NCBI RefSeq assembly: GCF_023055435.1
Contig: NW_025963835.1
Coordinates: 2,790,001 to 2,854,000, forward strand
DNA: 64,000 bases
Origin: Haliotis rufescens
Taxonomy: Eukaryota
Direction: 5' to 3'
In this document: one piece after another, positions 7,263-38,802 of the stretch
Numbering within the stretch: position 1 is the first letter of the stretch
Layout: each line of letters begins with the position of its first letter
Notes under the pieces: generated by a model
What the model was told of the DNA's origin: nothing
Seen by the model: the letters and a program-made list of their open reading frames with translations, nothing else
Database searches by the model: none
Translations under genes and position numbers: made by a program

Positions 7263-7388
7263 TCACGTTGTGTCTATTCTGATCATTCGCAGTTTGAAGT
7301 TGTCAGCAAGAACACAGGCTGCCTCGTTGGATCCGCCGCAGTAGCGAGATGAAGAGAACACAGTCATCAGACGTCCCTGTTGCTGCAC
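7263..7388 (-). CDS. phosphatase terminal exon 19 ([26 protein letters not shown]...TT*)
   Basis: ctccag acceptor; TVFSxxxYC motif; TGA at 7265-7263. Confidence 0.92.
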   Translation of the reverse strand: MQQQGRLMTVFSSSRYCGGSNEAACVLADNFKLRMIRIDTT

Positions 7389-10300
7389 CTGGAGAAGCAG
7401 AACTATGTGGTTAGGTTAGCCCCAGGTTTTGTTTTATACTCGTACACTTTGAGAATGGATGTTAATAATTTATATTAAGAGTACTGTGGGACAAAATAGT
7501 ATATCATTCAATTTATCAAAATCATGAGATGGCATGCACAAATTTGCTGTTTTAATTGCCCTGCTCAAATGAGCAACCCCGTTTAGATTGGGAAGTCCAA
7601 GTTCACTCAGTGGTCCTATGTTGCAACCTTCGATGAAAGCGTCCTCAGATCTTAATTGGAGTAAAACAGGCCTCAAAGTTTAATATTTCACCATGTAGCC
7701 ATATGGCTACAAATACTTCTTCTAGGTAGCCACTGGTAAAATCAAGAAGTCAAGCCAATATCATAGGTAGCAAAAAGGATTTGAAATTATATTTTACAAG
7801 CATTTTAATCAAATTCCTATAATAATATGTACAAGTTATGGCATTGGTATTAGAATCATATATTTACAATGCAGACTTCGTTGGCCAGTCTTTGTTTAAG
7901 TTTCTTTTCACAGCAACCAGATGTGATTTATTTTCGAATGTCACTGGCATGGACGTTTTTTTCCATCTGCATCCATCGACTCATCATAACTGTTTTCACT
8001 TACAACTTTCAGTGTATGATCGTTTTTGGCAGTGCAGAGATGTAGAAGTTGGTTGGTTGGTTAGTTTGTTGTTTTACGCTGCACTCAGCAATATTTCAGC
8101 TATATGACGGAGGTCTGTAAATAATCGAGTCTGGACCAGACAATCCAGTGATTAATATCATGAGCATCGATCCACGCAATTGGGATCAATGACATGCATC
8201 AACCAAGTCAGCGAGCCAGACCATCCGATCCCGTTAGTCGCCTTTTACGACAAGCATAGTCACCTTTTACGGCAAGCATGGGTTGCTGAAGACCTATTCT
8301 ACCCCGGAATCTTCACGAATCAAGATGTAGAAGTACTTTGCCATGATGTGGTCATGTAAAATGGAACGGTCACAAGTTCGTAAACTCAATGCACTGCACA
8401 CAGTAAAACTAGTTAGTGTAACCAAATCCTCACAACACTGCAAGGAGCTATCGAAACGTTCCCTGACACAGTGCAGTTATACAATCGAGGTAACGTCATA
8501 GCAATTGCCAATCAAGTTATTAATTTCTGTATCTACAAATGTGAAGTAATAACATTCAGTCCTCACAAGATATTTTTTCAAGGTAGTCGTTTGGTGACTT
8601 CTGATTCTTTAATGGCGGACAAAGCCCCACTGATGACCATTTTAGTCACAACTTTAAGGAATGTAAATGATGTGATCATAATGAGATTGTGAACGGGTCC
8701 AAGGTATTGATACTAATAATCATACGGAGATATTATACCCTGGATAATGGAGGATGTCAACTTACCTGAAATCCTGTTTCTTGCACCTCATGAGCTCGGA
8801 TCACGTGAGACAGGCCATTACGATCCAGGAAGGAGAAGAGAGCATCACAGCTGAAGAAGTGCGCTGTGCCTCGCCGCGAGTTGAACACAAACCCATTGTT
8901 CTCAGTCAGGTCCTGCATCACATCAGGGGTCACCAGGTCAAGGCTGAAACAAAGTGTGCCTGATCATCAACATCACTGGAATGTATGTGCACAGGCCTAT
9001 AATATATTACCTAGGGTGATTACCATGAGTATATCACACTATGGCATGATTATCATAGGAGGGTTGTATGTATACAGGGCTATAATATATTACCTAGTCT
9101 GATTACCATGAGTATATCACACTAAAGCATGATTATCATGGGAGGGGTGTACGTATACAGGGCTATAATATATTACCTAGGGTGATTACCATTACTATAT
9201 CACACTATAGTATGTTTATCATGGGAGGGGTGTACGTATACAGGGCTATAATATATCACCTAGGGTGATTACCATTACTATATCACACTATAGTATGATT
9301 ATCATGGGAGGGGTGTACGTATACAGGGCTATAATATATTACCTAGGGTGATTACCATGAGTATATCACACTATAGTATGATTATCATGGGAGGGGTGTA
9401 CGTATACAGGGCTATAATATATTACCTAGGGTGATTACCATGAGTATATCACACTATAGCATGATTATCATGGGAGGGGTGTATGTATACAGGGCTATAA
9501 TACATTACCTAGTCTGATTACCATGAATATATCACACTATAGCATGATTATCATGGGAGGGGTGTACGTATACAGGGCTATAATATATTACCTAGGGTGA
9601 TTATCATGGGAGGGGTGTACGTATACAGGGCTATAATATATTAGCTAGGGCGATCATCATGAGTAGATCACACTATAGCATGATTATCATGTATGTATTA
9701 TCATGTATGTATACAGGGCTATAATATATCACCTAGGGTGATTACTATGCTTATTTTATAGGACAATTACCATAACTGTATTATAGGATAATTACCATGA
9801 TTATATTATAGGATTATTACCATGTTATAGTATAGGATGATTACCATGAATATATTATAGGATGATTACCATGCTTATTTTATATGACAATTACCATGGC
9901 TGTATTATAGGATAATTACCATGATTATATTATAGGATGATTACCATGCTTATTTTATATGACAATTACCATGGCTGTATTATAGGATAATTACCATGAT
10001 TATATTATAGGATGATTACCATGATTGTAGTAAAGGATGATTACCATGATTATATTATAGGATGATTACCATGCTCATTTTATAGAACAATTACCATGGC
10101 TGTATTATAGGATAATTACCATGATTATATTATAGGATGATTACCATGATTATAGTATAGGAAGATTAACATGATTATGTTATAGGATGATTCCCATGCT
10201 TATTTTATAGGACAATTACCATGACTGTATTATAGGATAATTACCATAATTATTTTATTGAATGATTACCATGATTATATTATAGGATAATTACCATGAT

Positions 10301-11759
10301 TATATCATAGGATGATTACCATGATTATTTTAATGGATGATTACCATGCTTATTTTATAGGACAATTACCATGATTATTTTATAGGATAATTACCATGAC
10401 TGTATTATAGGATAATTAACATGATTATATTACAGGATGATTACCATGATTATAGTTTAGGATGATTACCATGATTTTATTATAGGATGATTCTCATGCT
10501 TATTTTATAGGACAATTAACATGACTGTATTATAGGATAATTACCATGATTATATTATAGGATGATTACCATGATTATAGTTTAGGATGATTACCATGAT
10601 TATATTATAGGATGATTACCATGCTTATTTTATAGGACAATTACCATGATTTTATTATAGGATGATTACCATGATTATATTATAGGATGATTACCATGAT
10701 AATATTATAGCATAACCCTATTTGAAGACCACCATGATTATTCTTCAGGATGTTTCCCATGATTATCTTATAGCATGGTCATTACTTGGATTACCTTTGC
10801 CAGTTTTACTTTACACAACATAAATATTATTTGATGGTTATGGTTAGAGAATGATTGCAACAATTACTTCACAGGAGTCTGTTAACATGACATAATTAAG
10901 CTTCATACCCAAACAGAATAATGTTAGTTACTAAACTGCTTTGGGCCATATACCATCACACACAACTTTGTAGGATGACTATCTTGGCAATGGTTACCCA
11001 TTTACCTGATGGGATCACTCCACAGTATCTCCCAGGCCATGGGGCTCTCTGTCTCGGGGTCCGGAAGGGGCACGGGGATCTTGTTGATGGCCTCTATACT
11101 GCCATTGTCGTGCTCAGTGCTGGGGATGCCACCATGGACACAGAACACCTGCAACATCCAGTGGACACAAACGTCAATGAGAAGTTTCATAAAATTGATA
11201 CCGGTATACTGCATATTTCAAAATTATGCATATTTTCATCTTGCTGGCAAAGTTTAATTCCGAATTGAAATTAGGAAATTCTGAAATTAGCAACTCATTT
11301 CTGTGACTGAAAAAGCAAAACTGTAAGCGACCAGATTCCTATATATAATGCGTCTATTATTATGCATGCATTGTCACCATGGCAACATCCAACAACATGG
11401 AGAACAACAGTTGTCAAAATTGTGCAAGGAAAGTCTTTATTTTGGGAGCTTGGCTCCTGAGAGGTTCTCGGGCTTCATTCCTGCTCCACACTGAAGCACA
11501 TATAACATGTGTGGCGTCTCCTTGGGCAAGGGTCTTTGTTGAAATCTTCCTCTGTTCACCCAGCAGTGAATGGGTATCCAGTAGGATGAGATGGCAGTGT
11601 GGTTGGTAACCTTCTAGCGCCTAACAGGCAGCTTGGGTTGTATACTCCCCAGGGAGCTGAGAATAATTCTTGAGTGCACAGTGATCCAGTGACTGGGGTA
11701 GTAATAGCGCTTTGAGCATGCCCCTGATTGGTGTGGATATATGCGCAATACAAATAGCC

Positions 11760-11799
<40 letters not shown>

Positions 11800-14700
11800 T
11801 AGTATATGGATTAATCTTATTCAGGGTCATAACAAATCACAGATGATATAATGAATGCAATATATTATCATGATTATGTTACATATCACAATACATGTGT
11901 CATTATTGCAATACGAAATTCAGGCCAATATCCATCTCTATGCATTACCTTGTCATCAATGGTAGCGGCAATGGGCATACAATCAAAGCACTCATTAACA
12001 GCATCCCAAATTTGCTGCCCTACACTGTCACCAAACTTGCTCAGACATTCCCTGCAAACAGAGAGTCAGATAGTCAATAAGGGCATGTTACAATACTGTC
12101 ATCAAATTGATAATGTCCTGTAAAAGATTCTGTAAATATAAAAGTTATAGAAAACTAAAAAAAATTGTGAAATGCAGAGTTATATTTTAAAACTTCTCCT
12201 TTATTATTAAATTATGCAGAAGAAGTGAACCCTGATCACTATGACCTTTCCCAATTAATAGATCATACACATATGGTGTGAAGTCTGCAACTTCAGCCCT
12301 GAGTCAAGCAAAATTGTTTTAGGTCTGGTAAGGTCAACTAAATATAGTCCACATACCAGCTCTATGATCTACTAGAAATGATGCCAAGAGAATTTCGAGA
12401 TACAGTGGTCCCTCGCTACAACGCTACCAATGGGGTCCAAATAATTGGTGGGCGTTATAGACGATGAGCCGTTTAACTGAGGCCGAGGGGGGGGAGCGCA
12501 CTCGGCCAATCTCACGATCTTCGCCTTGTCTTGCAGATTGCAATGATACAAGTTGTTTACCGTTCATAGTGTAAAAATATATATCCATTATGTTTTCGCC
12601 GTTTGTTATTATTTAAAAGCCTTAACTGTCACATTCAATGTGAATGTCGTCTACTTACATGAAAATATCGATCGATAATGGTAGTAACAGACGCTATGAG
12701 TGAAGAGCCAATCACAATTCATTACGCAAGTACAGAGTGATTCAGTGGCATTGATTGGTCATGTTGCTTAAAATACAGAAAATAAAGTTTTGACCAGCAC
12801 TACGCGCATTCATACACATTCATGCAAATATAGATACACATTCAAGCCAGATTAATTGGTTTGATACAGTTACTTGATCCGAATCAAAAGGAATGACCGC
12901 CGTGTTGTGACAGCAACTTTTACAAACCTGTAGAGGTTATGAATTCTCTGATGAAATCCTCCTTGGGGCACTTATTGCATTTTCCTTGCTCAAGAAAATC
13001 TATATGACATAGTTGTAACCATTTTCCTTAATAAAAAATGTTACCACACAAAAAACTTCGTTTTTGTATGATATACGACCACCCTTACGGGGCCTCACCC
13101 CCAACGGCGCCTCACGCCAGGGGGAGCAACTCTCACCCAAATCACTTTCCATATGTCAAATGCTGACGGAATGTGGGGAGGTGGGTGGCCGTGCCCCAAG
13201 GAGGATTTCATCAGAGAATTCATAACCTCTACAGGTTTGTAAAATTCTCTTTCTGATTAAATCCTCCTTGGGGCACTTATTGCATCAAGACAGACTCCCA
13301 AAGATAATCTAGGAAGTGGCATCCGTCAGCAACAGGCGTAAATAAATACATCGTATTTGATTATTCAACAGAATAAAATATTGAGTTCAATAAATGGAAC
13401 CAACCTTATCGTGAGGCACCACCGTCGAAAGGCGGGGGCTAGAGACAGGGCGTGGTCGACCATATATTATGATAAAGCCTGTTTTTGCGGCTTGTCATAA
13501 GTTGAGAACTCGAAACACCTCCCACCCCCCCACACTTTTTTGAACAAGTGATATAAGGGCGTAGATCACGAGAGACCATAACCAGCGCTGAGCTAGGCCA
13601 GAGGGTCCCCGAGGATCGAAGGAGTGCGTGCGCAAAATACGAGTATTATCGAGTAGTAAGGACTGATATTTATCGACCGCAGAAGATAAAATCCGGACCA
13701 TTACTGAGCAGTATAACCGGAAGACTGTCTAAAATCTCGAATGCTCAATCAGCTAGAGATTAGAACTTTGCCCAGTTCGGAGAACTGACTGACCAAACCG
13801 AGTACGCTCGCTTGAGTGTTTGTCGAGTTGGTAAGGTTTGATGAATCGTGCTCGGCTGGCTCCAAATAGCCGCGGAGCAGATCTGCTCAATGGGCAGAGC
13901 CGCGGCGTACGCTTTTGACGCAGCCACTGCTCTAACCTAATGAGCCTTCAACCTGGTAGGGGGGTCCCTGCCTGTAAGCGTATACGCTGTACAAATGTTT
14001 GAAACTATCCACCTCGAGATAGATTGTTTACTCGCAGGTGAGCCAACCTTCCTACCGCAGTAACAGCAAAATAGTTGGTTATCCTTACGGACACCCATAT
14101 TTCTGCTGATATAGGCCTTGAGAGTCGTGCGGACATCCAAGACATGAGCATGTCTTGCAGTGGTCCCCGACGAGGAAGGCTGTGAAAGAGCGGGTAGCTC
14201 AATAGGAGCCGTTCACGTGGAATCGTGTGCGACCCTAGGACGGTAATAGTCCGGTAGACGAAAACTGACTGTCCCGGTGATATTTATCGACCCCATGGAA
14301 GACAGTTATTTTGGGATCGGCTGACATAACACGAATGTCGCCTACCCGTCTGCCGGACGTTACCACCACAAGGAACGCCGTCTCCCAGCTCAACAGCTGA
14401 AGAGAGAGAGACGACAGATCCCGAAAGGAAGGACCGGACAGCCAATCTAGAATGATTGACAAGTCCCAAGGGGGACTGATCCGCCGGACTGGCGGTCGGA
14501 TCCTGTCCACACCTGCTAAAAAGCGCTGCACTAATGGGTGTGCACCCAGAAGTGCCCCGTCGACAGGGACGTGAAAAGCTGCGATAGCTGTAGAGTACCC
14601 TCGGACTGTTGATGCGGCCAGGCCGTCATCTAGTCGCGACTGGAGAAACTCAAGCACGGATACGAGATCTGCAGAAAAAAGATCTGCAATCCCTCTATCG

Positions 14701-26700: not shown

Positions 26701-29700
26701 AATAGGTACATCAAGCTAGCTGCATTCAACACACGAAATCAGCATTGGGGAAAGAGTGAGTGATTAGCTCTGAACAGTATTTCAGATATTTTATGATGTG
26801 AAAAAAGTCTGGTCACGTGATTTTATTTTAGCTTGTCATCACTGAGCCAGAGTATGCAGAATGTAGACAAAAAACATTCAATCAAAGTTGTTTAAATAAA
26901 TATTGATCAGCTGATTATGATGAATCCTTCATTAGACTGGGCAGTCAATGTTCGCTCCACCTGGAGGTGTCTTCAGATCTTCAAGCAGAGAGGTATCATA
27001 CAAGAGTTAATGAGATTTTATGAGATTACCCCATTCAGTCATATAAACTCACTGTCTTCTACATCTAGGGGCCACTGTGCGGATTTGATCAGCTTGGGTC
27101 GGGTCTTCTTTGATGGAGGTTCTTCATCACTGTCATCAGACTTGTTGTTGTCGGCAGTGATGCTGAAAGTTGGGACAAATACAGTATCTTATTCTTGGGT
27201 AACTCTTTGTAAAATTTGTCATTATATATTGTTCATCAGAATGTTTGGACATTTCTCTTTGAAGTGGGTGGGTTGAGTGGTTGAGTGAGTGAGTGAGGTT
27301 TTACGCCGCTTTTAGCAATATTCCAGCAATATCACGGCGGGGGGACACAAGAAAAGATGGGCTTCACACATTGTACCCATGTCGAGAATCGAACCCGGGT
27401 CTTCGGCGTGACGAGCAAACGCTTTAACCACTAGGCTACCCAACCGCCCCTCATTTCTCTTTGAAAAGAATCACAAAAGAAACAATCGATCCAGCTTGGA
27501 TCATCACTATCAATGTTGAGGACCCCATTTCTCAAAGCTATTTTGGTGCTACAACTGCCATAAGTATTACATACTCACTTTGTGATTTAACCAATCCCTG
27601 TTTTAAGCAGGCAGCTAGCAAGAGCTGGCACAGAACATTGCATGTGTTAGTAGCAGCTGTATTGGATTTTACAAGCTGACTGACCTTTTATACCACGAGA
27701 CCACAAATCGAGGGAATACACATACTGTATGATACATTCACCTGGTGAAGTCCTGTCCAGCCTGCTATTGACACATACATCAAATTTATCACAACAAATT
27801 CACCCATTACAATAAATTATTGTCAGTGATTTTTTTGGTCTGACAAAAAGATCAATCTTGAGACAACCATCCAATGCTTAGTACAGTAACATACAGTGCA
27901 TACAGGGTGACGTATAACATTGCGATGTCTGTGACATCTGTACAGACTGGCCATCAGACAGTATGATATTGTGATATCTGTAAAGGTCGACCTCAGACAG
28001 TATGACATCATGTCTGTACTGGATTTGGTTGGTTTGTTGTTTAACGCCGCACTCAGCAATATTTCAGCTATATGACAGCAGTCTGTAAATAATCGAGTCT
28101 GGACCAGACAATCCAGTGATAGATATCATAAGCATCGACCCACGCAATTGGGATCGATGACATACTTCAACCAAGTCAGCGAGCATGACCACCCGATCCC
28201 GTTAGTCGCCTCTTACGACAAGCATAGTCGCCTTTTACGGCAAGAATGGGTTGCTGAAGACCTATTCTACCCCGGATCTTCACAGGTCTATATCTGTACT
28301 GGAAGGCCAACAGACATGTATGTGTTTTTACAAGATGGCAGCCAGCCAATCAGATAGCTAGACACTTTATCAAGTAATGATAAATACCTTTTCACATTAC
28401 TTGTACAAGACACAGGAAGACGAAGTAGAACGGATGTTCCGCGGAACTTGAGCTGTCCGACGGCGATGAGGAACTCAGCTAGGGGCAACTTGTCCACTGT
28501 GTCAGCACCAAACAACCTGGAATCAAGCCCAACATCACTCTTCACACTATCTCTACAATCAATGCTTTCTTCCCTTACAGTAAACTACGGAGTGAGTGAG
28601 TGAGTGAGTTGGGTTAAACGCCGCTTTTAACAGTATTACAGTTATTTCGCGGCGTATCAGCTTCATGTGGGAGGAAAGCCTGAAGTGATGCTGGTCTCAG
28701 ACGTTTACCACTTCGGTGAAACCAACGAGCATGGGTATGGTGCTGACAAACCTAGAAACATAATCGGGGCGAACCAGGATTCGAACCCACAATCATAGGT
28801 TTCTGGCATGCCCAAGAGACGCAATTCTGCACAGCAAATCGCGGCGCCTTAGACAACTTGGCCACCCGTGCCCCCCATAAACTACGGATATAAGGAACTC
28901 AAAGGGAGCTATAATTCTAGTTTGTTATAACCCTAGTTCGTAATAAGCATGTATACAGCATGCATATATATAAGCATGTATACAGCATGCATATATATAT
29001 ATAAATGCATGGTGTATACATGCTTATTATGAACTAGGGTTATAACCATGATAACAAACTAGAATTATATATACAGTTCCCGGGACCAAAAACGTTCATT
29101 ATAAGCGTGTTCATTATAAACATAGTTTTCTGTACAAAGCATATAACAAAACCCTGAGAACAAACACTTTACAGTTTTCATGAAATGCAATACTGACAGA
29201 TTTTTCAACGCAATGCCTAATCCAAAGGCATGCCAATAATATGACATGATCTTCTTGTCTGGGCATAATCTGGTGTGTTTTAGGTGACAGTTAGCAGGGT
29301 GTTATGGTATGTATGCATACATATTAACAATGCACGTACATAAGGAAGCAAAAACATATGGCTGTTTAAATCATTATATTTATAGAAGTTAAGGTTTCAT
29401 GTTACATGCCAGTGACATTTCCATCCTTGTAAGGAGGTGAGGTGAAATAGGGTTTAACGTCGCGTATCAGATTATTGCACTTATATAGCAACGTGCAAGT
29501 ACGTGTGTGTGTGGCCGCTTGTGCTAGTCCGAACTGATGCCGATTTATAGTGCTAGCTCACTGAGATACCATGCCGCACTTTAACATGAATACCCCACTC
29601 AGACACAGTATACTGACTCCGACCCGACCAGTCCTTGTTTTAGCCCCTTAATGCCGAGCGCCAGACAGGGTAACAACAAGTACCATCTTTTAACGTCTTT

Positions 29701-32700
29701 TGGTATGACGCGACCGGGGATCGAACCCCGGACCTTCCGCTCTCCGGGTGGACGCTCTACCACTAGACCACGGAGGCGGTCCCATCCTTGTAAGGAAGAC
29801 ACTCAAAGTTCAGGGTATCAGTGGCGGATTTTCTTCACCCTAACATAGATCCCCATCTATAATAGGCTTAAACACTGTTATGTGCAATGATATGACATCC
29901 ACTAATTCTTGGAAATCAAGAGAAGAGCACATGTACCCCTGGTACCCCTATGTACATGGCAAAGACTCTCAGAAGTTACAGCGAGTGCCCTTGACCACAA
30001 AGCAGCCCAAGCTATGTAATGTCATAACAATATATTTACCCTCTTTTAGAAAAGAGAAATCATTCTGTAAATACAGCATTTTTGTTCTGTGTTTGTATTG
30101 TCAGATGAACATGATGAACTAACTTTGCACTATTGGTAGCATCCTCCATGACTGATTCCTCGTCAACAGGGAGGCCCTTCAGGTGTCGCACATCTTTAAC
30201 AAGATCTCTGAAAGTAAACATGTGAAGAATTAACAACAGACTCTGCAACATATTGACGTGGTTTCTTACTCCTAGAAGAGACTAAAATTCAGCTAAAACT
30301 CCCAGATGAGCAAACTATGCAATAAATGGAACCCAAATCTCCTGATGTCAGTTGTTTGCATGCTGCACATGGTCTTTCTCTCATCGAATTTGTTTTATAC
30401 ACGACTACTGTATTGTTTCTGATATTTCTGGCTCTTAGATGGTTCATAAGTTATCACTAGCATTGGGTACAAAGGACCTACAACAAGCATCGGGTGGTCG
30501 TCAATGACAACCTACAGGCATAGGGTGCTGATGACCTATAACAGACATTGGGCGCTAATGACCTACAACAAGCATCAGGTGCTGACGACCTACAAGCATC
30601 AGGTGCTACAACAAGCATTGGGTGCTGATGACCTACAACAAGCCCTTGTGCTGCATCCTACAACAAACACTGGGTGCTGATGACCTACAACAAGCATTGG
30701 GTGCTGATGACCTACAAGAATAAGGTGCTGACGACCTACAACAAGTATCTGGTGCTGACGGCCTACAACAAGTATCGGGTGCTGACGACCTACAAGCATT
30801 GGGTGCTGAGGACCTACAAGCATAAGGTGCTGAGGACCTACAACCATAAGGTGCTGAGGACCTACAACAAGTATCTGGTGCTGAGGACCTACAACAATTA
30901 TCGGGTGCTGACGACCTACAACAAGTATCGGGTGCTGAGGACCTACAAGCATTGGGTGCTGAGGACCTACAAGCATTGGGTGCTGAGGACCTACAAGCAT
31001 TGGGTGCTGAGGACCTACAAGCATAAGGTGCTGATGACCTACAAGAATAAGGTGCTGAGGACCTACAACAAGTTTCTGGTGCTGAGGACCTACAACAAGT
31101 ATCTGGTGCTGAGGACCTACAACAAGTATCTGGTGCTGAGGACCTACAAGAATAAGGTGCTGATGACCTACAAGAATAAGGTGCTGAGGACCTACAACAA
31201 GTATCTGGTGCTGAGGACCTACAACAAGTATCTGGTGCTGAGGACCTACAACAAGTATCTGGTGCTGAGGACCTACAAGAATAAGGTGCTGGTGACCTAC
31301 AAGAATAAGGTGCTGATGACCTACAAGAAGTATCTGGTACTGACGACCTACAACAAGCACTGGGTGCTGACAACCTACAACAAGTATCAGGTGCTGATGA
31401 CCTACAGAAAGTAATGGGGTACCAGGAAAATACAAATAGCACAGTGTACTGAGGACCTATCCTGCCTGGAATCCCAGGGTTTACTCACCTGAACTCATCA
31501 AACTGCAGGAAGTTGTCACTGTTGGCATCATAGTATCTGAAGATGTATCTACAACGGGCCTCAGCCGGCATGCCACCATGCTGTGTGCACGGCTCCATAC
31601 ATGCCAGCCCCAACAAGAGCTCCTTGAACGTCAGGTAGTTCTTCTTGTGGATGTCAAATGCTCTGCGAAGATATAGTATTACCATCACACGTTATGAAAC
31701 AACTATCTGTTGGGACAGAGGCTGCTACAAACAAGTTGTATTGTAGAAGACCAGGTATTTATCTATTTTTTTGAAAAAAGTACCCATTGAACCAAACAAA
31801 AACAAAAATTTGAAATTGAGGATATTTTTTATATGATTATAGCATTGCATTTAATCCAATAACTTAAAATTACGACTTTTTCTCTTTCTTTGTTCCATTA
31901 TCAGCAACTACAAGCCAGTTTTACATGGCTGAAACAATACTGGAGTTAAATTAAGCCTCTTGGACGAACGTTGACTGTTTGCAGTTTCCAACATGACCAA
32001 CTGAAGAATGAATTAACTAAATTTGTAATCAATCATTTTCAAATAATATAAGTTCACTTTAATCATGTTAATGAATTTATGGGGGGTGGAAATGAATTAA
32101 GTATAACATGTATTAAAACACAAGAGTCAGTCAAGACAAAGTTTCAAGGCCTGTTGCAAAGTGCCCTAGTAGATTTGGTATTTGTGTTGCAGAATAATAC
32201 ATGACATAGTAACAAATGATTTAGTACATTTCACAGTTTGGCTATTTTATCAATTGTTATTTACACATGGTGAATACAGAGGAAATGTCGTATGATTGAT
32301 CCTAAATCGATCATTGATTTCTTTTTCAAACCAATCATCAATTCTTAAATCTTAACACTATCAGGCTGAGTGAGTGAGTGAGTTGGGTTTATCAGAGCTT
32401 TGAGCAGTATTTCAGTAATAATTCATTTAAGTATGCCAAACCCTCAAACTCTACATGAAACAATGGTGCACAGCAAAGCGCTGGGGCTACAGCCTGCTAA
32501 ATCTGTGAAGAGCTACCTGAACAGTGGCAGAGGCTTGCCTCCCTTCACTCCTTTAGTGGTGATGTACCTCTCAAACGTCATGAAGTTCATTGAATGGCTT
32601 GGGTGACAGAAGTCGATGAACTCTTCAAACAGCATGTCTTGTTCTGTAATTTAGATAGTAAAAGATCACTAACACGCTCAGTAATGTGTAGACAACAGTA

Positions 32701-35700
32701 GATAACTTACACGCTCCATAACGTCTAATAACGATCGAGAAATTTAACTTTGGTAAATCAAATGGGTCCAGGGTACTTATCATAACACATTGCAGATGTA
32801 GCACACTGGAGTATCGAGGATGAGCATACACTTCACACAGACCTTTCTTGGCTAGCTTGGCCGACTTGACCAGAGTCTCCTGTGGCGTGAGTGACGAGCC
32901 ATTCCCTCCGTCAACATACTCCACACCACTCTCCACCAAGCTCCCTACAGGGCAGCTATCTGAAATAGGGAAATGATTCTGTTAACATTTATTTTTGTGT
33001 TATTTTGTAAACCATGGAATTCTCATTTAAACAGTCTGTGCCAAAAATTGTTGTGTCAGCTAGCCAGAACGTATCTCTTGGCAACACTATCACCCTATTT
33101 CATTACTAACATATCTAGACCCGTGAAGATCCGGGATAGAATAGGTCTTCACTCTTCAGCAACCCATGCTTGACATAAAAGGGGACTATGCTTTTCATAA
33201 AAGGCGACCAAAGGGATCGGATGGTCAGGTTCGCTGACTTGGTTGATGCATGACATCGTATCCCAATTGCGTGGATCGCTGCTCATGATGTCAATCACTG
33301 GATTGTCTCGATTATTTACAGAACGCCATCATATAGCTGAAATATTACTGAATGCGGCGTTAAACAACAAAGAAAGAAAGAAACAATTATTACCTGAGTT
33401 TCAAAACAGAAAGGATATTACAGGAGTTGGATATTGTGACTAACAGATAAAATTGCAGACTGTATCTATGGTTGATAAATGCTTACAAAGATGATAGTGT
33501 GTGAGTGGCAGAAATACAGGTCTGCAGCTACATCTTGACTTGAACAGTTGACATGGTCTCGCACATTCACATTACAGAAGAGATCAGGGATTTATCTAGC
33601 CCTCTTCAGCAAATGACAACCAATTCCCAATTGGAATTAATAATTTCCCAAGTCTTCAGATTTTTTTTAAATGGGAACATTAAAAAATAAAAAAATTTGA
33701 ACGATATCACACTTTTTTCCCATTTTGCCTGACAAGGGCACTTTGTCTGAAATCCTAGATAACTCCTGAGAGGTGTCAAGACATGCCTCCTGACATATCA
33801 TTAAATATTGTCATACTTCAATTCCAGTATGATACTTATTGAGAAACAATGTTATTGCATTCAGGCTTACGTGAGGCAGTACAACACTATCAACAAGTTT
33901 GTGTTTAAGTCATATGGTTAATGTAGGCTCCTTCTAACATGCACAATGATACAGAACAGTATCCAATTTTTAACATTTCTCCACGACCCCAATTTTATAG
34001 CTTTGGACCACCATATTTAATCGGGGACCCCAACTAACTTGGACCACCAAAATAAATAACCCAGGTTACTCCCTGAATAATCATGATAATATTTCAACAA
34101 AATGTGCCATGTCCTGAAAATCAATCTCTCACCTTCTTTGAGTTGCTGAATGAGCCGGAGTGGTTCAAATCCTAAAATCCCGGGCTCGACCCCTGGCGCC
34201 ATCTGCTCCTCCATGTCCCTCTCTGATAACCATACTGAGGTGTCTGGATACTGAAAATACAACAAAATATATGTTTCAACAGAAGATACAGAATACAGAC
34301 CATCTAACATCCTTAAGAGAATAATTGGTTGTCACTGGTGTTCTAATTAATTGATTTCATCATACATTGATTGGTTCATTGAAAGAAATTATAAAATCTG
34401 TGATCATCAGCTGATCATTGATTATTTTCATATGATATCAGTTCAGTTAATGAATCTGTTGGGGCTAAATAAATAAAGCCTCACATGACTGACAATGGAT
34501 GACAAATATGGTCATAAGGCATGTAGTTGATCATGTTGCCGAGTCATTGAGTAAAGTAAGCCATCATTTATTAATGTTGCTGCTTCGTATATTGTTTTCT
34601 ACATCATGTACATGAGCGAATGAGTGTTATGGTTTTACTCCACTTTAAGCAATATTCCAGCAATATCACGGCGGGGACACCAGAAATGGGCTTCACACAT
34701 TGTACCCATGTCGGGAATCGAACCCGGGTCTTCGGCGTGACGAGCTAACGCTTCAAGTACTCGGCTAACCGACCACCCTTTCATGTACATGATGAAGAAT
34801 ATAAACAAATGATAGAGCGAAAGTGGTCCAATTGTTTCTATTCATATTCTCATTCATGATTTTTTATCACAGAAATCCAAACATGGAGGATGCAATAAAA
34901 ATGTATCACCAGGGGCAGAAACTAACATTTTTAGTCTACTAGTCCTTATAATGATAACAAGTAGCAAAAGCCTTATAAAGGGCAAACTTCTACTAGTCCT
35001 TATGATACCTTAACCATTGGGCAGTTTGACGACGGCTACAGGACTAGTGCCAATTTCTAACGCTTATCACGTATCTCCAACATATGACCAGAGCTTCAGA
35101 TCGGTTCTTTTTCTTGGGGGGGGGGGCACGGGTGGCCCAGTCGTCTAAGGCGCTGCAATTCGTTGTGCAGAGTTGCGTCCCTTGGGCACGCCAGAAACCT
35201 ATGATTGTGGATTCTGGTTCCCGGTTCGCCCCGATTATGTTTCTAGATTTGTCAGCACCATACCCATGCTCGTGGGTTTCACCGAAGTGGTAAACATCTG
35301 GGACCTGCATCACTTCGGGCTTTCCTCCCACATTAAGCTGACACGCCATGATATAACTGGAATACTGTTAAAAGCGGTGTTAAACCCAACTCACTCACTC
35401 ACTCACTCATTTTCTTGGACACTGACCATCATCCAAAATATCCTGAAGGTTATTTTCAATTTTGTTATAATGTAGAAGAATGTCATATAAAAAAATGTGA
35501 TAAAAGAATGGAACTTTCCTATTGCTACCTGTCTCGAGCAAGAACACTCCATGATATACATGATGTATCTGTAGTAAACGCATTCAGAATTTCAATCGTA
35601 TCTGACCAAATTCCATATGTTCTGCTAACCTGGTCTATGCTTGTGAGGGGTGATGTAAGAAAGATGACATGTGTAGATGATGGTCGGTGAGAGAATCTTG

Positions 35701-38700
35701 TGATGTTGGTGCGTAATACGCCTTTCAAAGCAATCCTTTGTCCACATACCTGAAACAGACAAAACCATCAAGGAGTACTATGATTACCTAAACAAGAACT
35801 TTCTGTAATTCAACATTATACAGAATGTCTCATTCCCCATGTTATCGAACCATTGATAATACATACTTTTCTGATTCCTAATTTAACGTAAGTGTGCTAG
35901 TCAAGTAGGAGTTTTGACAGTTCCAATTTTACCAATACCAACTCTGTAGCAGATAATATTTGCAGATTAGTGAGAAAAGAATCAAAATTCTAAACCTGCT
36001 TTTACATTCATAAATTTTAAAACAATGTATGATCAAGGATATATCATCAAAACTATACTGAAATCGTTCACTGTACAGAGTGGTGTATGCATGATTCCAA
36101 TTCATCCCTTATAAGCAGGGCCAGACACAACACAAGATTGCAAGGTGCATGTAAATTCTAACACTGCACTCAGATTCCTGGGTGTTTTGACGTTTATTTG
36201 ACATGCGCGAAAAGACGGTAACTCTTCCTCAAAGGGGATTAATTCTTTATTGGCCCCTTTGCCTTCAGTTTTCAGTGATGCCTTCAAATTACAAGGTATG
36301 TTATTATCACACTTAAATCACCATGCTCCTTGTAATCACAAGGATAGGGAGGCAAGCTATGGAGTATTTTCAAAATGGCAGCAATATGACGAATGCTAGA
36401 CAACTTTCAGACACATTTTCTCTGATAATTGCAATAACCTTTGAAAGAGCATAAATGGAAAGTGTTCTACATTCATCTCTTGTGTTACTTCTTGTGTAGC
36501 AGGGCTTGGAGTCATCCCACAGATGACATCCTTACCTTGTCAGCTTGCTGATGAGGTTAACCTCTTTGGTCATGTGGATAAGGCGTCCAACCTCGGATCA
36601 GAAGGTCCGTGGTTCGAATCCCATCACGGGTCTCGGAAATTTTATGGCCGCTACACTTGCATTAAACATGTTTAACATTCTCCCATTTAAAAAATGGACC
36701 GTACATTGAAGTTTGAATATGGCAGCCGGTGACCTGATTCAATGGTGAGCTGATGATTTGTTTGGTTTATCGGGATCCTCTGATATCATATTGCAATGGA
36801 TTGTAAACTAAATTTGCTAAAAACAAAATATTGCTATATATAAACAAGGTGTTACATTATGATTAGGTTCCAAGCCTGTGGCAAATCGTAACGATAAAAG
36901 AGTGTAGTAGTTGATCTGACAAACACCTAGTAATTTGAGTGTGGCACTGGAATTTACGTACCCCTTGAAATCCGGACCTGATAAGCGCCCTTTGAGGATT
37001 AATGTTTGGATCAAGATTAGAAGAGATATGGACATTATCGACCTCAAAGGGACAGTACGTCAACGGTTCTCTGTCTTTTTAAATCATACATACATGATAT
37101 AATTTCCGAGTATGACACAACATGCTCGATTCTGTTCCTAAACCAAAAGAATAGAGCTCTGCACAGTGAAGCCAACAATGCAAGCGCTGCACAGAGAAAG
37201 CTGGCTTCAGTCTTTCTTTTTTTAGGGACAAATTGGAGAGAAAGCTTGTGTTTTTTTTTAGTTGAGTTACAAAATACTTATTGCCGGGTTTGATTAGATT
37301 AGAAGCCAGTGTTTTTCAAAGCAGAGATTTGGCCAGGTATTTGGCCTCCCTGACTACCAAAAAGATTGCTTACACACCAAAGATAAGAGTACAAGCAAGT
37401 ATTGTGATACATATGGGACCGTGACCAAGGTATGGTGATATGTATAGGATCGCACAGTTGGCGTATCGTCCCAGCCCACGTCCAGTCATGGAATTCCTAT
37501 GTAGAGCTAGCGATATGGTCACTTTGATGGGTAACACTATACTGCATCTCACTGTCACAGTAGTTAAAGTATATCTATCATTCGAACAGCCGTATTTGAT
37601 ATTGATTTGACGTTATAAAGAGAGGTGTGACATCATCAAAGCTGCCCCCTTCAGAGTGCACACGTTCAGGCCTGTCAACATTGGGTTACACTGTACACCT
37701 GTCAGAACATTCCATCCTCATTCAGAATATTGGTACCCGTGTCATGATGAAAAGAATGTGAGGTGAGGTGAAATGGGGTTTAACGTCGCGTCCAAGATTA
37801 TTGCACTTATATAGTGACGTGCATGTACGTGTGTGTGTTTGTGAGGCTTACCATTAGACCACGGAGGCGGAAGAGTAAAATAGTGTGAACACTATAATTT
37901 GACAAACATTCATATTTTGTGAATAGGTTTCAAACTTTCAACTACTGTTTGAGTTTTAATGCCGACCTGCAAGAATTATGTTAAGAAATGTGTGCAAAAA
38001 CATGTCTGTTCATTCATGGAAACCCCGCTAAAGTACGGAACCATTCAGGGGTTTGACAATAGGTGACGTCATTCGAGTGCAGTGGAAGTTCACAGACGAG
38101 GTAATGGAGGTCACGCCTTTTATCGAGGATTTGTTTTCTTTAGAATGTGGCTGAATTGTATTGCTGAAGTCATTACCTACTGGTATGAAGCAGAATTTGA
38201 GTTTTGATTCACTCATCTCTCGAAATAGCAGAAACAGAATAAAGCGAAAAGAGCCAAGTAAGCTTGAGGGTTATTGGCTACTGTTTATAAACAATGCTTC
38301 TGAACGGTCAACGTCCTGACGCATTAAGAATATGAAAACATTGTAAATAACAGATCTACAGGAAAATAAACTGCAGACACCTTTTTTACACAAAGTTTCC
38401 AAGAAACATTCCTTAAAATGAAGTCATGATTCAAGTTTTGAAGATGACACTGAATCGGTTTACTTCCTTGAAATTGTTTCTTTGATGTTTTGTGATAAAC
38501 CTAAGAAATACATTTCAATATAAACAAATACCAGTAATGGACAAGTAAAATTAATCTTTTTTTCAGTGTAACATGTAAGCGTCAGTATAGCGTGTGCATT
38601 TCATGCAGACGATCTTTTGTTGTGAGTCATGAAAGCGTACCTCTTCAGCCAAGTGCAGAGCAACGGATTTCAGAGTTTCCTTTTTGTGCCTCTCAGTTGT

Positions 38701-38802
38701 TGGCAGCCACAAACCCTTGTCTTCATTGTTCACTAACAAAATCTTTCCGTGATTCGAATCGGAAATAAGTACACTGACAAATTCTGTGCTTTTACGTGAC
38801 AT
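7263..38802 (-). CDS. PPP-family Ser/Thr protein phosphatase with degenerate Nudix-like N-terminus and EF-hands (19 coding exons, ~796 aa)
   Basis: Hand-spliced exons: 38641-38802, 35630-35749, 34133-34250, 32843-32959, 32517-32643, 31489-31662, 30124-30207, 28388-28516, 27053-27162, 26456-26611, 25394-25485, 22284-22364, 21968-22100, 20644-20774, 19724-19830, 11949-12051, 11006-11148, 8766-8943, 7263-7388. Total 2391 nt, phases consistent, GT-AG introns. PPP motifs GDIHG, GDYVDRG, RGNHE, VHGG, LWSDP, RAHE; EF-hand loops [12 protein letters not shown] and [12 protein letters not shown]. Confidence 0.9.
8050..8322 (-). mobile_element. SINE-like family A (core gcttgtcgtaagaggcgactaa; (caaa/caac)n tail)
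   Basis: TSD agatgtagaagt. Other copies ~28024-28288, 33117-33385, 40000-40240, 41894-42159, 50283-50546, 51649-51901, 54135-54338, 55005-55243, 58935-59073. Confidence 0.85.
8766..8943 (-). CDS. phosphatase exon 18 (...[10 protein letters not shown]...[13 protein letters not shown])
   Basis: RG and RAHE motifs; tttcag / CAG|gtaag. Confidence 0.95.
8990..9745. repeat. 83-bp minisatellite (~9 copies)
   Basis: cagggctata recurs at 9075, 9158, 9241 and onward. Confidence 0.9.
9746..10740. repeat. 25-bp minisatellite (ataggatgattaccatgattatatt)n
   Basis: ~40 diverged units. Confidence 0.9.
11006..11148 (-). CDS. phosphatase exon 17 (VFCVHGGIP...ILWSDPI)
   Basis: HGG and LWSDP motifs; ttgcag / AG|gtaaa. 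Confidence 0.95.
11455..11798 (+). mobile_element. SINE family E (Nin/Deu-core-like CACCCAGCAGTGAATGGGTA, (ATT)n tail)
   Basis: Second copy on the opposite strand at ~21647-21862 with (atc)n tail. Confidence 0.6.
11949..12051 (-). CDS. phosphatase exon 16 (ECLSKFG...[13 protein letters not shown])
   Basis: ttgcag / AAG|gtaat; PP1-like FDCLPxAA segment. Confidence 0.95.
12918..19250 (-). mobile_element. DIRS1-like tyrosine-recombinase retrotransposon, full length, ORFs disrupted
   Basis: ITRs 12918-13150 and 19039-19250; ICR 13191-13285 complementary to both termini. Gag Zn-finger remnant ([10 protein letters not shown]) ~18400; [25 protein letters not shown] ~16017-16286; RNase H ~15240-15560; methyltransferase VDLFAS..DAF..DW ~15050-15230; YR SGRRVGD and KAH*VR ~13900-14660. 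Confidence 0.95.
17270..18000. repeat. 183-bp tandem repeat (~4 copies) inside DIRS gag
   Basis: gacctcgagc at 17401, 17584, 17767, 17951. Confidence 0.9.
19724..19830 (-). CDS. phosphatase exon 15 ([24 protein letters not shown]...)
   Basis: RGNHE motif; ttacag / AC|gtaagt. Confidence 0.95.
19792..20360. repeat. 74-bp minisatellite containing the exon-15 acceptor and first 39 coding nt
   Basis: Acceptor CAG copies (plus-strand ctg) at 19831, 19905, 19979, 20110, 20184, 20258, 20332; one 57-bp unit with mutated AG at 20036. Confidence 0.95.
20644..20774 (-). CDS. phosphatase exon 14 (GDIHGN...FLGDYVDRG)
   Basis: PPP motifs 1 and 2; aag acceptor, GAG|gtgag donor. Confidence 0.95.
21968..22100 (-). 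CDS. phosphatase exon 13 (PAFNWG...[14 protein letters not shown])
   Basis: ttccag / G|gtaag; leads into the GDIHG motif. Confidence 0.9.
22284..22364 (-). CDS. phosphatase exon 12 ([15 protein letters not shown]...)
   Basis: tttcag / AAG|gtaag, phase 0-0. Confidence 0.85.
22741..25222. repeat. 32-bp minisatellite (ggaatcccctagggagatcctgcaagggacat)n, ~77 copies
   Basis: Directly visible. Confidence 0.97.
25394..25485 (-). CDS. phosphatase exon 11 (GTPAVSGS...SIDSFNQ)
   Basis: ggcag / CAA|gtaagt, phase 1-0. Confidence 0.85.
25680..26055. repeat. 25-bp minisatellite (ctcaaatgaaaccatcagcaagaat)n
   Basis: Directly visible, degenerate at its left edge. Confidence 0.85.
26456..26611 (-). CDS. 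phosphatase exon 10 (GKVDPVF...[14 protein letters not shown]...WDLQ)
   Basis: NAGNAG acceptor gcagcag, G|gtcag donor, phase 1-1. Confidence 0.85.
27053..27162 (-). CDS. phosphatase exon 9 ([22 protein letters not shown]...)
   Basis: tttcag / A|gtgag, phase 2-1; acidic/basic linker. Confidence 0.75.
27275..27450 (-). mobile_element. tRNA-derived SINE family B (TAGCCTAGTGG / GGTTCGATTC boxes, (cact)n tail)
   Basis: Other copies ~21060-21220, 34615-34780, 50991-51135, 54740-54899. Confidence 0.85.
28388..28516 (-). CDS. phosphatase exon 8 ([10 protein letters not shown]...[14 protein letters not shown])
   Basis: ttccag / AG|gtatt, phase 2-2. Confidence 0.85.
29436..29781 (-). mobile_element. 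tRNA-derived SINE family D
   Basis: 15-bp TSD CCATCCTTGTAAGGA (29421-29435, 29782-29796); A/B boxes TGGTCTAGTGG, GGTTCGATCC. Other copies ~37758-37870, 42445-42746, 50907-51415. Confidence 0.88.
30124..30207 (-). CDS. phosphatase exon 7 (DLVKDVR...NSAK)
   Basis: tttcag / AA|gttag, phase 2-2. Confidence 0.85.
30480..31410. repeat. 24/27-bp minisatellite (ggtgctgaggacctacaacaagtatct)n
   Basis: Directly visible; units differ by one aca triplet. Confidence 0.92.
31489..31662 (-). CDS. phosphatase exon 6, EF-hand pair ([15 protein letters not shown]...[14 protein letters not shown])
   Basis: cgcag / AG|gtgag, phase 2-2; EF-hand loop patterns. Confidence 0.9.
32517..32643 (-). CDS. phosphatase exon 5 (EQDMLFEEF...LPLFR)
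   Basis: ttacag / AG|gtag, phase 1-2. Confidence 0.8.
32843..32959 (-). CDS. phosphatase exon 4 (DSCPVGSL...KLAKK)
   Basis: tttcag / G|gtctgt, phase 1-1. Confidence 0.75.
34133..34250 (-). CDS. phosphatase exon 3 (YPDTSVWLS...QQLKE)
   Basis: tttcag / G|gtgag, phase 0-1. Confidence 0.8.
35115..35408 (+). mobile_element. tRNA(Leu/Ser-like)-derived SINE family C
   Basis: Head GGTGGCCCAGTCGTCTAAGGCGCT, (actc)n tail. Other copies ~20-140, 20925-21345, 28590-28876, 39590-39853, 42990-49400 (split by DIRS), 60295-60460. Confidence 0.8.
35630..35749 (-). CDS. phosphatase exon 2 ([13 protein letters not shown]...SIDQ)
   Basis: tttcag acceptor, CAG|gttag donor, phase 0-0. Confidence 0.7.
36495..36655 (+). 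mobile_element. solo LTR (Gypsy-like) containing a tRNA-Arg-derived segment
   Basis: TGTAGC...GCTACA termini, 4-bp TSD CTTG on both sides; internal TGGATAAGGCGTCCAACCTCGGATCAGAAG..GGTTCGAATCCC. Confidence 0.75.
38641..38802 (-). CDS. phosphatase exon 1 (MSRKSTEF...LAEE), Nudix-like
   Basis: ATG at 38802-38800, donor GAG|gtacgc, phase 0. Confidence 0.75.

What the first reader, a model, noticed from the sequence alone, without database searches (positions are those of the whole stretch)
7263..38802. Non-canonical PPP phosphatase: Nudix-like domain + EF-hands N-terminal to an intact catalytic domain
Seen: 19 exons splice in phase to ~796 aa with all PPP metal-binding and catalytic motifs (GDIHG, GDYVDRG, RGNHE, HGG, RAHE) in the C-terminal ~300 aa, and an EF-hand pair upstream. 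Established: animal PPEF/rdgC enzymes carry EF-hands C-terminal to the catalytic domain, and calcineurin uses a separate EF-hand subunit. Inference: this is not PP1/2A/2B/4/5/6/PPEF but a poorly characterised, single-chain, possibly Ca2+-regulated invertebrate phosphatase family.
Basis: partly seen in the sequence, partly recalled or inferred. Interest (0 to 1): 0.78.

Follow-up and report, generated by a model that had tools for sequence, protein, structure and literature searches.

The report
Nudix-EF-hand phosphatase gene of abalone
This red abalone gene encodes a phosphate-removing enzyme carrying two built-in sensor-like domains, one of them calcium-binding; many animal groups have it but no backboned animal was seen to, and it appears never to have been studied.

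Summary
On the minus strand, 19 GT-AG exons (38802..7263) splice in phase to 796 aa. This is identical to RefSeq XP_046355984.1, which is named "PPEF pef-1-like". Spliced contigs from 4 runs of one study join exons 2-6 exactly as modelled.

The protein has four parts:
- a Nudix-fold domain with a degenerate catalytic box;
- a four-EF-hand domain of the neuronal-calcium-sensor (NCS) type, with one canonical Ca2+ loop;
- a conserved segment of about 100 aa with no known relative;
- an intact PPP catalytic domain.

The same architecture is found from sponges and ctenophores to amphioxus. No vertebrate appears in any hit list. The gene is single-copy in abalone.

It does not have the domain layout of PPEF, calcineurin, PP5 or BSL. 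The nearest solved catalytic domain is BSU1, by a small margin. Six literature searches found no paper on the family.

Verdict: a real, conserved, unstudied variant of the PPP phosphatases. Ca2+ control is inferred, not shown. The scan had noted the intronic decoy-acceptor minisatellite of this gene before (s1-815174).

The parts
38641..38802 (-). Exon 1 (aa 1-54): start codon and first half of the Nudix-like domain, including the degenerate Nudix box (T36..G57)
   Evidence: 100% match to P0182; GT donor. Box residues.
35630..35749 (-). Exon 2 (aa 55-94): Nudix-like domain
   Evidence: Spliced contigs X1, X2 and X3, table 8.
34133..34250 (-). Exon 3 (aa 95-133): end of the Nudix-like domain (W101, LLGxEP motif)
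32843..32959 (-). Exon 4 (aa 134-172): linker and start of the EF-hand domain
32517..32643 (-). Exon 5 (aa 173-214): EF1, degenerate, with an NCS-like 'xPSxxMN' loop
31489..31662 (-). Exon 6 (aa 215-272): EF2 (degenerate loop D218..E229) and EF3 (canonical loop D260..E271)
30124..30207 (-). Exon 7 (aa 273-300): exit helix of EF3 and the linker to EF4
28388..28516 (-). Exon 8 (aa 301-343): EF4 (degenerate loop) and the invariant 'LKFRGTS' block
27053..27162 (-). Exon 9 (aa 344-380): acidic/basic linker ([16 protein letters not shown])
26456..26611 (-). Exon 10 (aa 381-432): family-specific conserved segment ([14 protein letters not shown]...)
25394..25485 (-). Exon 11 (aa 433-463): family-specific segment, continued
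22284..22364 (-). Exon 12 (aa 464-490): family-specific segment ([16 protein letters not shown])
21968..22100 (-). Exon 13 (aa 491-534): N-terminal helices of the PPP core
20644..20774 (-). Exon 14 (aa 535-578): GDIHG and GDYVDRG
19724..19830 (-). Exon 15 (aa 579-613): RGNHE. Its acceptor and first 15 codons are copied in the upstream minisatellite.
11949..12051 (-). Exon 16 (aa 614-648)
11006..11148 (-). Exon 17 (aa 649-695): HGG
8766..8943 (-). Exon 18 (aa 696-755): RG (R720) and RAHE. This exon was the query of the large protein search.
7263..7388 (-). Exon 19 (aa 756-796 plus stop): the SSSRYCGG loop. The protein ends here with no C-terminal tail.
19792..20368 (-). 74-bp minisatellite in intron 14 carrying copies of exon 15's acceptor. 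RefSeq isoform X2 (644 aa) enters the copy at 20263-20060 and ends without the RGNHE motif.

Best explanation
Shown. This is one expressed, single-copy gene of the red abalone. It encodes a 796-aa, single-chain PPP-family Ser/Thr phosphatase with four modules, in this order:
- aa 1-133: a Nudix-fold domain whose catalytic box is degenerate;
- aa ~165-340: a four-EF-hand domain of the neuronal-calcium-sensor (recoverin/KChIP) type, in which only EF3 has a canonical Ca2+ loop;
- aa ~345-490: a charged linker followed by a conserved family-specific segment;
- aa ~495-796: a PPP catalytic domain with every metal-binding and catalytic motif intact and no C-terminal tail.
The same protein occurs across animal phyla, from sponges and ctenophores to amphioxus and Ciona.

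Inferred. The enzyme is an active phosphoprotein phosphatase. Its activity or substrate access is set in cis by the N-terminal modules. Ca2+ binding to EF3 changes the NCS-like domain, which then releases or repositions an inhibitory contact, possibly made by the conserved middle segment. This would be a one-chain counterpart of calcineurin A+B or of PPEF. The Nudix-like domain no longer hydrolyses anything and serves as a ligand-binding or docking module.
For: Gene model. 19 in-phase GT-AG exons identical to RefSeq XP_046355984.1.

Transcripts. Contigs of 4525, 4107 and 916 nt join exons 2-6, and one of 573 nt joins exons 4-6, with 0 gaps; 3 of the 4 carry 1-3 differing letters (table 8).

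Copy number. 19 of the 31 own-genome matches are these exons. The other 12 match only aa 503-772.

Conservation.
- 10 of 10 and then 10 of 10 long homologues scanned have Metallophos at the C-terminus and an EF-hand match upstream of it, though in P0015, P0061 and P0109 that match stays below Pfam's cut-off.
- Catalytic-region identity is 59-79% among the best 120 hits of a Capitella query, including a sponge and a ctenophore.
- Haliotis orthologues are 96-99% identical.
- The catalytic motifs are invariant in 36 of 36, apart from one I/L position in GDIHG.

EF domain. The family profile matches KChIP1 (1.2e-10), NCS-1 and recoverin over about 150 residues. Calcineurin B matches at 3e-6 to 1e-4. 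EF3 loop counts are D1 29/36, N or D3 30/36, D5 31/36, G6 30/36, E12 35/36. EF1, EF2 and EF4 are non-canonical.

Nudix. The family profile hits NUDT18 (1.6e-5) and NudJ (5.4e-5), and all 13 hits are Nudix fold. Pfam NUDIX is found in 6 of 18 N-termini. In the Atlas features search, 24 of 30 hits are NUDIX. The glutamate of 'RE' and the second glutamate of 'EE' are E in 0 of 36.
Against: No biochemical data exist for any member.

Domain contacts and any autoinhibitory role of the middle segment are therefore guesses.

Only one of four EF loops looks able to bind Ca2+, and abalone has N instead of G at loop position 6.

The abalone N-terminus itself gets no Pfam NUDIX hit.

The read evidence covers junctions 2-6 only and comes from one study. 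The runs are labelled 'RNA?' by guess.

A RefSeq isoform X2 would give a truncated, motif-less product.
Confidence: 0.6

Rival explanations
1. The EF-hand and Nudix-like domains are structural or targeting modules only. The phosphatase is constitutively active or controlled by partner proteins, and Ca2+ plays no regulatory role.
For: Three of four EF loops are non-canonical across the family, and the abalone EF3 loop has N at position 6. NCS-like domains with few working sites exist among the PDB hits, such as the KChIPs (their site occupancy is recalled, not tested). The linker holds a basic stretch, PPSKKTRPK, that could be a localisation signal.
Against: The EF3 loop ligand positions are kept in 29-35 of 36 members across phyla that include cnidarians and bilaterians. 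That is hard to explain without metal binding.
Confidence: 0.25
2. It is simply the abalone orthologue of PPEF/rdgC (C. elegans pef-1), as the RefSeq name says.
For: RefSeq names XP_046355984.1 and the H. rubra protein 'phosphatase with EF-hands pef-1-like'. It does combine EF-hands with a PPP domain.
Against: [quoted passage not shown] Here the EF-hands lie N-terminal, no IQ family is reported by Pfam at E<=1, and the protein ends right after the catalytic core. No PPEF chain is among the best 60 PDB matches. Automatic names for orthologues disagree with one another: PP1-like, BSL1, BSU1, PP2B, PP12-like, and mostly 'uncharacterized'. A PPEF-type protist protein (Fabomonas) shares only 35% identity and sits on the outgroup side of a long branch.
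Confidence: 0.04
3. It is a bifunctional enzyme: an active Nudix pyrophosphohydrolase fused to a phosphatase, acting in sequence on a nucleotide-derived substrate.
For: There is clear Nudix-fold homology. The ctenophore box RKCREDGG keeps G-x5-E-x7-R and E/D at the EE positions.
Against: The 'RE' glutamate is L, I, V or F in 29 of 36 and E in 0 of 36. The second 'EE' glutamate is E in 0 of 36. Abalone reads HLAEEVCG. A passage of PMC12799467 says that the NUDT9-H domain of human TRPM2 binds ADP-ribose without enzymatic activity, so a Nudix domain can lose catalysis and remain a ligand module.
Confidence: 0.07
4. It is an annotation chimera: two neighbouring genes (Nudix/EF-hand and phosphatase) have been wrongly merged.
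For: Long, repeat-filled introns separate the parts: 3029 bp with a 32-bp satellite, and 7672 bp with a DIRS-like element. Reads were laid on exons 2-6 only.
Against: Full-length orthologues occur in many phyla, some on single contigs of 2.6-4.5 kb that can only be transcripts (P0010 802 aa on 2637 nt; P0061, P0078). Abalone contigs run 3247-3646 nt beyond exon 6, enough for the remaining 1573 nt of CDS. All junctions are in phase.
Confidence: 0.03

Closest known systems
PPEF / rdgC (PPP7) phosphatases
   Same: A single chain that combines a PPP catalytic domain with EF-hands. For RDGC, Ca2+ activation through release of autoinhibition is shown (passages of PMC11962071).
   Different: The domain order is reversed: EF-hands lie N-terminal here and C-terminal in PPEF. 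There is no IQ motif. The EF domain here is a four-EF NCS-type module rather than an EF-like/EF-hand tandem. There is an extra Nudix-like domain. No PPEF chain is in the best 60 PDB matches.
Calcineurin (PP2B: CnA catalytic subunit plus CnB EF-hand subunit)
   Same: A PPP core working with a four-EF-hand sensor. The EF profile also matches CnB chains at 3e-6 to 1e-4, and the catalytic domain scores 171-175 bits against CnA.
   Different: Here the sensor is fused in cis and N-terminal. There is no C-terminal CnB-binding, CaM-binding or autoinhibitory tail, because the protein ends at the core. The EF domain is closer to NCS proteins (about 1e-10) than to CnB.
BSU1/BSL/PPKL Kelch phosphatases (plants, alveolates)
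   Same: BSU1 is the best single-domain solved match for the abalone protein (181.7 bits), a sponge member (177.6) and an Ectocarpus relative (157.5). The loop 'YCGGSNEAA' resembles the BSL-type loop; that resemblance is recalled, not tested.
   Different: There are no Kelch repeats. The margin over PP1 and PP2B is small for abalone. No tree containing BSL sequences could be built.
Neuronal calcium sensor family (recoverin, NCS-1, KChIP, GCAP)
   Same: The profile matches across all four EF-hands, including the degenerate EF1.
   Different: The domain is internal, so it cannot carry an N-terminal myristoyl switch. Only EF3 is canonical. It is fused to an enzyme.
Non-catalytic Nudix modules such as NUDT9-H of human TRPM2
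   Same: A Nudix fold with a damaged catalytic box attached to a signalling protein. NUDT9-H binds ADP-ribose without enzymatic activity (passage of PMC12799467).
   Different: No ligand is known here. The best PDB relatives are NUDT18 and NudJ, not NUDT9.

Membership tests
PPP (phosphoprotein phosphatase) family | The motifs GDxHG, GDxVDRG, GNHE, HGG and RAHE/H, and a Metallophos domain | tested here: met
   Metallophos scores 105.4 bits against a cut-off of 21.5, at aa 530-750. The motifs are invariant in 36 of 36, apart from one I/L position in GDIHG.
PPEF / rdgC | An N-terminal (extended) IQ calmodulin-binding motif | tested here: not met
   No IQ family is reported by Pfam at E<=1. The N-terminus is a Nudix-like domain. 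The feature is taken from PMC11962071.
PPEF / rdgC | An EF-like/EF-hand tandem C-terminal to the catalytic domain | tested here: not met
   The EF-hands lie at aa ~173-315, upstream of the catalytic domain. The protein ends at aa 796, right after the core.
PPEF / rdgC | A catalytic domain that groups with PPEFs | tested here: inconclusive
   No PPEF chain is among the best 60 PDB matches. The Fabomonas PPEF-type protein is 35% identical. No tree with animal PPEFs was possible.
Calcineurin A (PP2B) | A C-terminal regulatory tail (CnB-binding helix, CaM-binding site, autoinhibitory peptide) | tested here: not met
   No sequence follows the core. The feature is recalled from established knowledge.
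PP5 | N-terminal TPR repeats | tested here: not met
   No TPR family in Pfam. A TPR-PP5 protein (P0247) shares only 26% identity.
BSU1/BSL/PPKL | An N-terminal Kelch-repeat domain | tested here: not met
   No Kelch family in Pfam at E<=1.
BSU1/BSL/PPKL | A catalytic domain that groups with BSLs | tested here: inconclusive
   BSU1 is the best single-domain PDB match in 3 of 3 members tried, but by small margins, and no tree was built.
Nudix superfamily | Homology to the Nudix fold | tested here: met
   The profile A2 hits 13 of 13 Nudix-fold chains, best 1.6e-5. Pfam NUDIX is found in 6 of 18 N-termini, best 1.5e-8.
Nudix superfamily (active hydrolases) | The Nudix box GX5EX7REUXEEXGU with its catalytic glutamates | tested here: not met
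   Abalone reads T36..E42..H50 L51 A52 E53 E54 V55 C56 G57. The 'RE' glutamate is E in 0 of 36, and the second 'EE' glutamate is E in 0 of 36.
Neuronal calcium sensor (NCS) family | A four-EF-hand globular domain with a degenerate EF1 | tested here: met
   Profile A3 matches KChIP1 at 1.2e-10 over profile positions 3-155, and also NCS-1, recoverin, hippocalcin and GCAPs.
Neuronal calcium sensor (NCS) family | An N-terminal myristoylation site at the start of the protein, and two or three working EF-hands | tested here: not met
   The domain starts near aa 165 of the chain. Only the EF3 loop is canonical.

The most novel reading that the evidence does not exclude
An ancestral animal 'coincidence' phosphatase. 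The degenerate Nudix domain would bind a nucleotide-derived messenger, such as ADP-ribose or a dinucleoside polyphosphate, while the NCS-like domain binds Ca2+. Together they would unlock a PPP catalytic core whose closest solved relative is the plant/alveolate BSU1 type. On this reading the enzyme represents a Ca2+-controlled PPP branch beside calcineurin and PPEF, kept from sponges to amphioxus and not seen in vertebrates.
Probability: 0.2. Interest if true: 0.8.

Novelty: new variant of a known kind. Interest (0 to 1): 0.58.

Why it matters
The PPP phosphatases are regarded as a small, fully catalogued enzyme family. According to a passage read here (PMC11962071), calcineurin was the only well-understood Ca2+-controlled member until PPEF.

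This gene shows a further layout. A calcium-sensor-type domain and a Nudix-type domain are fused in front of an intact PPP core. The catalytic domain is 59-79% identical among the best 120 hits of an annelid (Capitella) query, which include a sponge and a ctenophore. That implies an important, conserved job.

No vertebrate, Drosophila or C. elegans member appeared in the lists seen, and this probably explains why nobody has studied it. Testable models that carry it include Nematostella, sea urchin, Ciona and amphioxus.

The finding also corrects a misleading RefSeq name ('PPEF pef-1-like').

Tried and rejected
The Nudix and NCS assignments rest on sequence profiles.

Flanks were checked only by ORF listing. 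These show a second DIRS-like element at about 43.5-48.1 kb and no obvious neighbouring gene.

Phylogeny with canonical PPPs.
- No PP1, PP2A, PP2B, PP4, PP6, BSL or animal PPEF sequences could be obtained.
- The catalytic-region search and the length-limited search each listed only their best 120 hits. These were all family members, fragments or protist relatives.
- The control genomes of the genome search are all prokaryotes.
- The tree used 41 rows chosen by hand out of about 430 stored proteins, with only a PP5 and a protist PPEF-type protein as outgroups. It shows the metazoan rows on one side of a weak branch (80/0; 90% of bootstrap trees) and says nothing about PP1, PP2B or BSL.

Exon-by-exon searches. 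Pfam and PDB searches of single exons gave only weak, subfamily-ambiguous hits: PP2A was best for exon 14, and PP2B, BSU1 and PP1 for exon 17.

Atlas search. The features search on aa 381-796 returned only generic PPP clusters.

Middle segment. The profile of aa ~396-494 (A4) found nothing in the PDB (best E 0.8) and nothing in Pfam.

Literature. Searches found no paper on this architecture. Only listings and abstracts were seen, apart from passages of PMC2559854, PMC11962071 and PMC12799467. Chen, Dixon and Manning 2017 (recalled) is not held and may classify this family. Supplements were not consulted. The library lacks most subscription journals, so 'not in print' is not established.

Pseudogene. 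Rejected, because the frame is intact, the gene is spliced, and it is 96-99% identical among four Haliotis species.


Full report
WHAT IS THERE.
The finding lies on the minus strand. ORF and stop-free-segment listings showed the PPP motifs in separate short exons, and an EF-hand exon that Pfam recognises (EF-hand_1 at 30.6 bits).

Exon 18 (59 aa, window 8766-8942) was searched against 1.84 billion representatives. It gave 270 proteins at E<=0.001. Of the best 150 listed, 31 are 500 aa or longer and carry the match near their C-terminus.

One of them (P0010, 802 aa) aligned collinearly along the whole span 38784..7269. Used as a query, it returned the RefSeq protein of this very gene: P0182 = XP_046355984.1, 'serine/threonine-protein phosphatase with EF-hands pef-1-like isoform X1 [Haliotis rufescens]', 796 aa.

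A script that walked the window against P0182 found 19 exons, all GT-AG, in phase, 2391 nt, running from 38802 to 7263.

Whole-protein work used P0182, which a tool returned.

IS IT ONE GENE AND IS IT EXPRESSED?
Four runs of one study were laid on window 31470-37469. They hold the stretch only at its exons.
- Contig X1 (4525 nt) lies on exons 2, 3, 4, 5 and 6 exactly at the model's boundaries. The pieces are contiguous in the contig, with 0 gaps and 0 differing letters. About 220 nt lie before exon 2 and 3646 nt after exon 6.
- X2 (4107 nt) and X3 (916 nt) show the same five exons. X4 (573 nt) shows exons 4-6 (table 8). X2 also has no differing letters; X3 has 3 and X4 has 1.

The remaining CDS is 1573 nt, so the long contigs have room for all of it.

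The runs are labelled RNA only by guess, but intron-free contigs argue for RNA.

Independent support for one gene comes from orthologues. Full-length proteins of the same order sit on single 2.6-4.5 kb contigs in other species.

The abalone genome holds the N-terminal exons only once. Of 31 matches, 19 are these exons and 12 match aa 503-772 only.

THE FOUR MODULES.
(1) aa 1-133, Nudix-like domain.
- Pfam NUDIX passes its cut-off in Tubulanus (30.0 bits) and Branchiostoma (22.7 bits) but is silent for abalone.
- Among 18 N-termini, 6 match NUDIX.
- A profile of those 18 finds only Nudix-fold chains in the PDB: 13 of 13, with NUDT18 at 1.6e-5 and NudJ at 5.4e-5.
- The Atlas features search gives NUDIX for 24 of 30 hits (a lead only).
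- Aligned to the Nudix box, abalone reads T36-x5-E42-x7-H50-L51-A52-E53-E54-V55-C56-G57.
- The 'RE' glutamate is E in 0 of 36 members, and so is the second 'EE' glutamate.
- Ctenophores come closest to the canonical box, with RKCREDGG.
- The domain is therefore a Nudix fold that has very probably lost hydrolase chemistry.

(2) aa ~165-340, EF-hand domain.
- A 13-sequence profile matches KChIP1 (1.2e-10), NCS-1, recoverin, hippocalcin and GCAPs across profile positions 3-155, that is, across all four EF-hands.
- Calcineurin-B-like proteins and calcineurin B follow at 1e-6 to 1e-4.
- Only the EF3 loop (D260-E271) is canonical and conserved. EF1, EF2 and EF4 carry basic or missing ligand residues.

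(3) aa ~345-490, linker and middle segment.
- A charged linker is followed by a strongly conserved segment ([14 protein letters not shown]..., [16 protein letters not shown]).
- It has 12 invariant columns in 16 sequences.
- It has no match in the PDB or in Pfam.
- One unnamed MMETSP protein aligns from aa 407 on, so at least part of the segment may occur outside animals.

(4) aa ~495-796, PPP core.
- Metallophos scores 105.4 bits.
- All catalytic motifs are invariant.
- The protein ends directly after the core.

WHICH PPP?
Against solved structures, the abalone protein scores as follows:
- BSU1: 181.7 bits;
- PP2B: 171-175 bits;
- PP1: 162-175 bits;
- PP2A, PP5 and PPEF: not among the best 60.

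The top row, 9b9g at 242.7 bits, is a chain matched twice.

BSU1 is also the best single-domain hit for a sponge member (177.6 bits, against about 160 for PP2B and about 143-148 for PP1). It is likewise best for an Ectocarpus relative (157.5 bits, against 112-125 for PP1 and PP2B chains other than that same twice-matched chain, 9b9g).

A search with a 334-aa Limulus fragment was restricted by length to 184-584 aa, a window that should admit PP1, PP2A, PP2B and PP5. Its best 120 hits were family fragments and then protist proteins of 39-49% identity: Hemiselmis, Ancoracysta, a chrysophyte, Chrysoparadoxa, Blastocystis and Ectocarpus. No row looked like a bona fide canonical subfamily member. 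Rows named 'PP1-like' or 'PP2A-like' are 53-59% identical insect fragments of this family.

The family therefore does not look nested in a named subfamily. Its nearest characterised catalytic relative may be the BSU1/BSL type.

This is ranking, not phylogeny. The only tree I could build lacks canonical references.

DISTRIBUTION.
Named members seen:
- Porifera: Amphimedon, Ephydatia.
- Ctenophora: Bolinopsis, Mnemiopsis.
- Cnidaria: Acropora, Montipora, Nematostella, Actinia, Rhopilema, Sanderia, Paramuricea.
- Mollusca: many species.
- Annelida, Nemertea, Brachiopoda, Bryozoa, Rotifera, Priapulida and Tardigrada.
- Arthropoda: chelicerates, crustaceans, a springtail and several insects.
- Echinodermata and Hemichordata.
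- Cephalochordata, and Ciona.

No vertebrate, Drosophila or Caenorhabditis name appears in the 80, 120 and 120 listed rows. Those lists are capped, so loss is likely but not proven.

MECHANISM.
Shown:
- an intact, strongly constrained PPP core;
- a conserved canonical Ca2+ loop in an NCS-type domain fused upstream;
- a Nudix fold without catalytic glutamates.

Inferred:
- Ca2+ binding at EF3 switches the NCS-like domain and thereby relieves or redirects an intramolecular block of the active site. RDGC does something similar with its IQ lever and EF tandem (PMC11962071, passages), and calcineurin does it with CnB and CaM.
- The Nudix-like domain acts as a ligand or docking module. The precedent is the NUDT9-H domain of human TRPM2, which binds ADP-ribose without activity (PMC12799467, passage).

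None of this has been tested.

KNOWN OR NEW?
The gene is annotated, and the family sits in databases as 'uncharacterized protein' or under conflicting automatic names. Six full-text searches found no study of it, but the library is incomplete and a key phosphatome paper is not held.

I rate it a new variant of a known kind: a PPP with an undescribed regulatory architecture. I confirmed that RefSeq isoform X2 uses one of the decoys.

Noticed in passing
window 19792-20368 (intron 14): A 74-bp minisatellite repeats exon 15's acceptor and its first 15 codons ([12 protein letters not shown]...). RefSeq isoform X2 (XP_048251988.1, 644 aa) equals X1 up to aa 591. It then reads into the copy at 20263-20060 and stops, so it lacks RGNHE and everything after it.
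   Followed up: partly
window ~13750-18300 (intron 15, minus strand) and ~43500-48100 (plus strand): Two DIRS-like retroelements with reverse-transcriptase-, RNase-H- and tyrosine-recombinase-like ORFs. That reading comes from the translations only and was not scanned. One lies inside the 7672-bp intron 15 and carries a 183-bp x4 tandem repeat at 17265-18000.
   Followed up: no
window 22742-25225 (intron 11); 30514-31413 (intron 6); 8991-10710 (intron 17): Large intronic tandem arrays: a 32-bp unit x71, a 27-bp unit x~35, and 83-bp and 25-bp units.
   Followed up: no
window 33070-33469, 34470-35469, 36470-36669: Intronic stretches with summed contig depth of 1e3 to 5e5 in all four runs, and many short contigs and joints. 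They are probably copies of very abundant dispersed repeats, some of them transcribed (tables 2, 5, 8). A related ORF motif (..[12 protein letters not shown]..) recurs at about 8180, 28150, 33150 and 51450.
   Followed up: no
P0182 aa ~396-494 (window exons 10-12: 26611-26456, 25485-25394, 22364-22284): A strongly conserved family-specific segment with no Pfam or PDB relative. It is present in animals, and partly in one unnamed MMETSP transcript, P0380.
   Followed up: partly
cluster of P0245: A family-like protein is filed under the plant Anisodus tanguticus (KAK4337028.1, 817 aa). This is probably contamination of that assembly by an animal.
   Followed up: no
G000:C57:17444468-17471530: Three intron-less Metallophos open frames (281-337 aa) are clustered within 27 kb on the same chromosome, about 14.6 Mb from this gene. 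They may be retrogene-type phosphatases.
   Followed up: no
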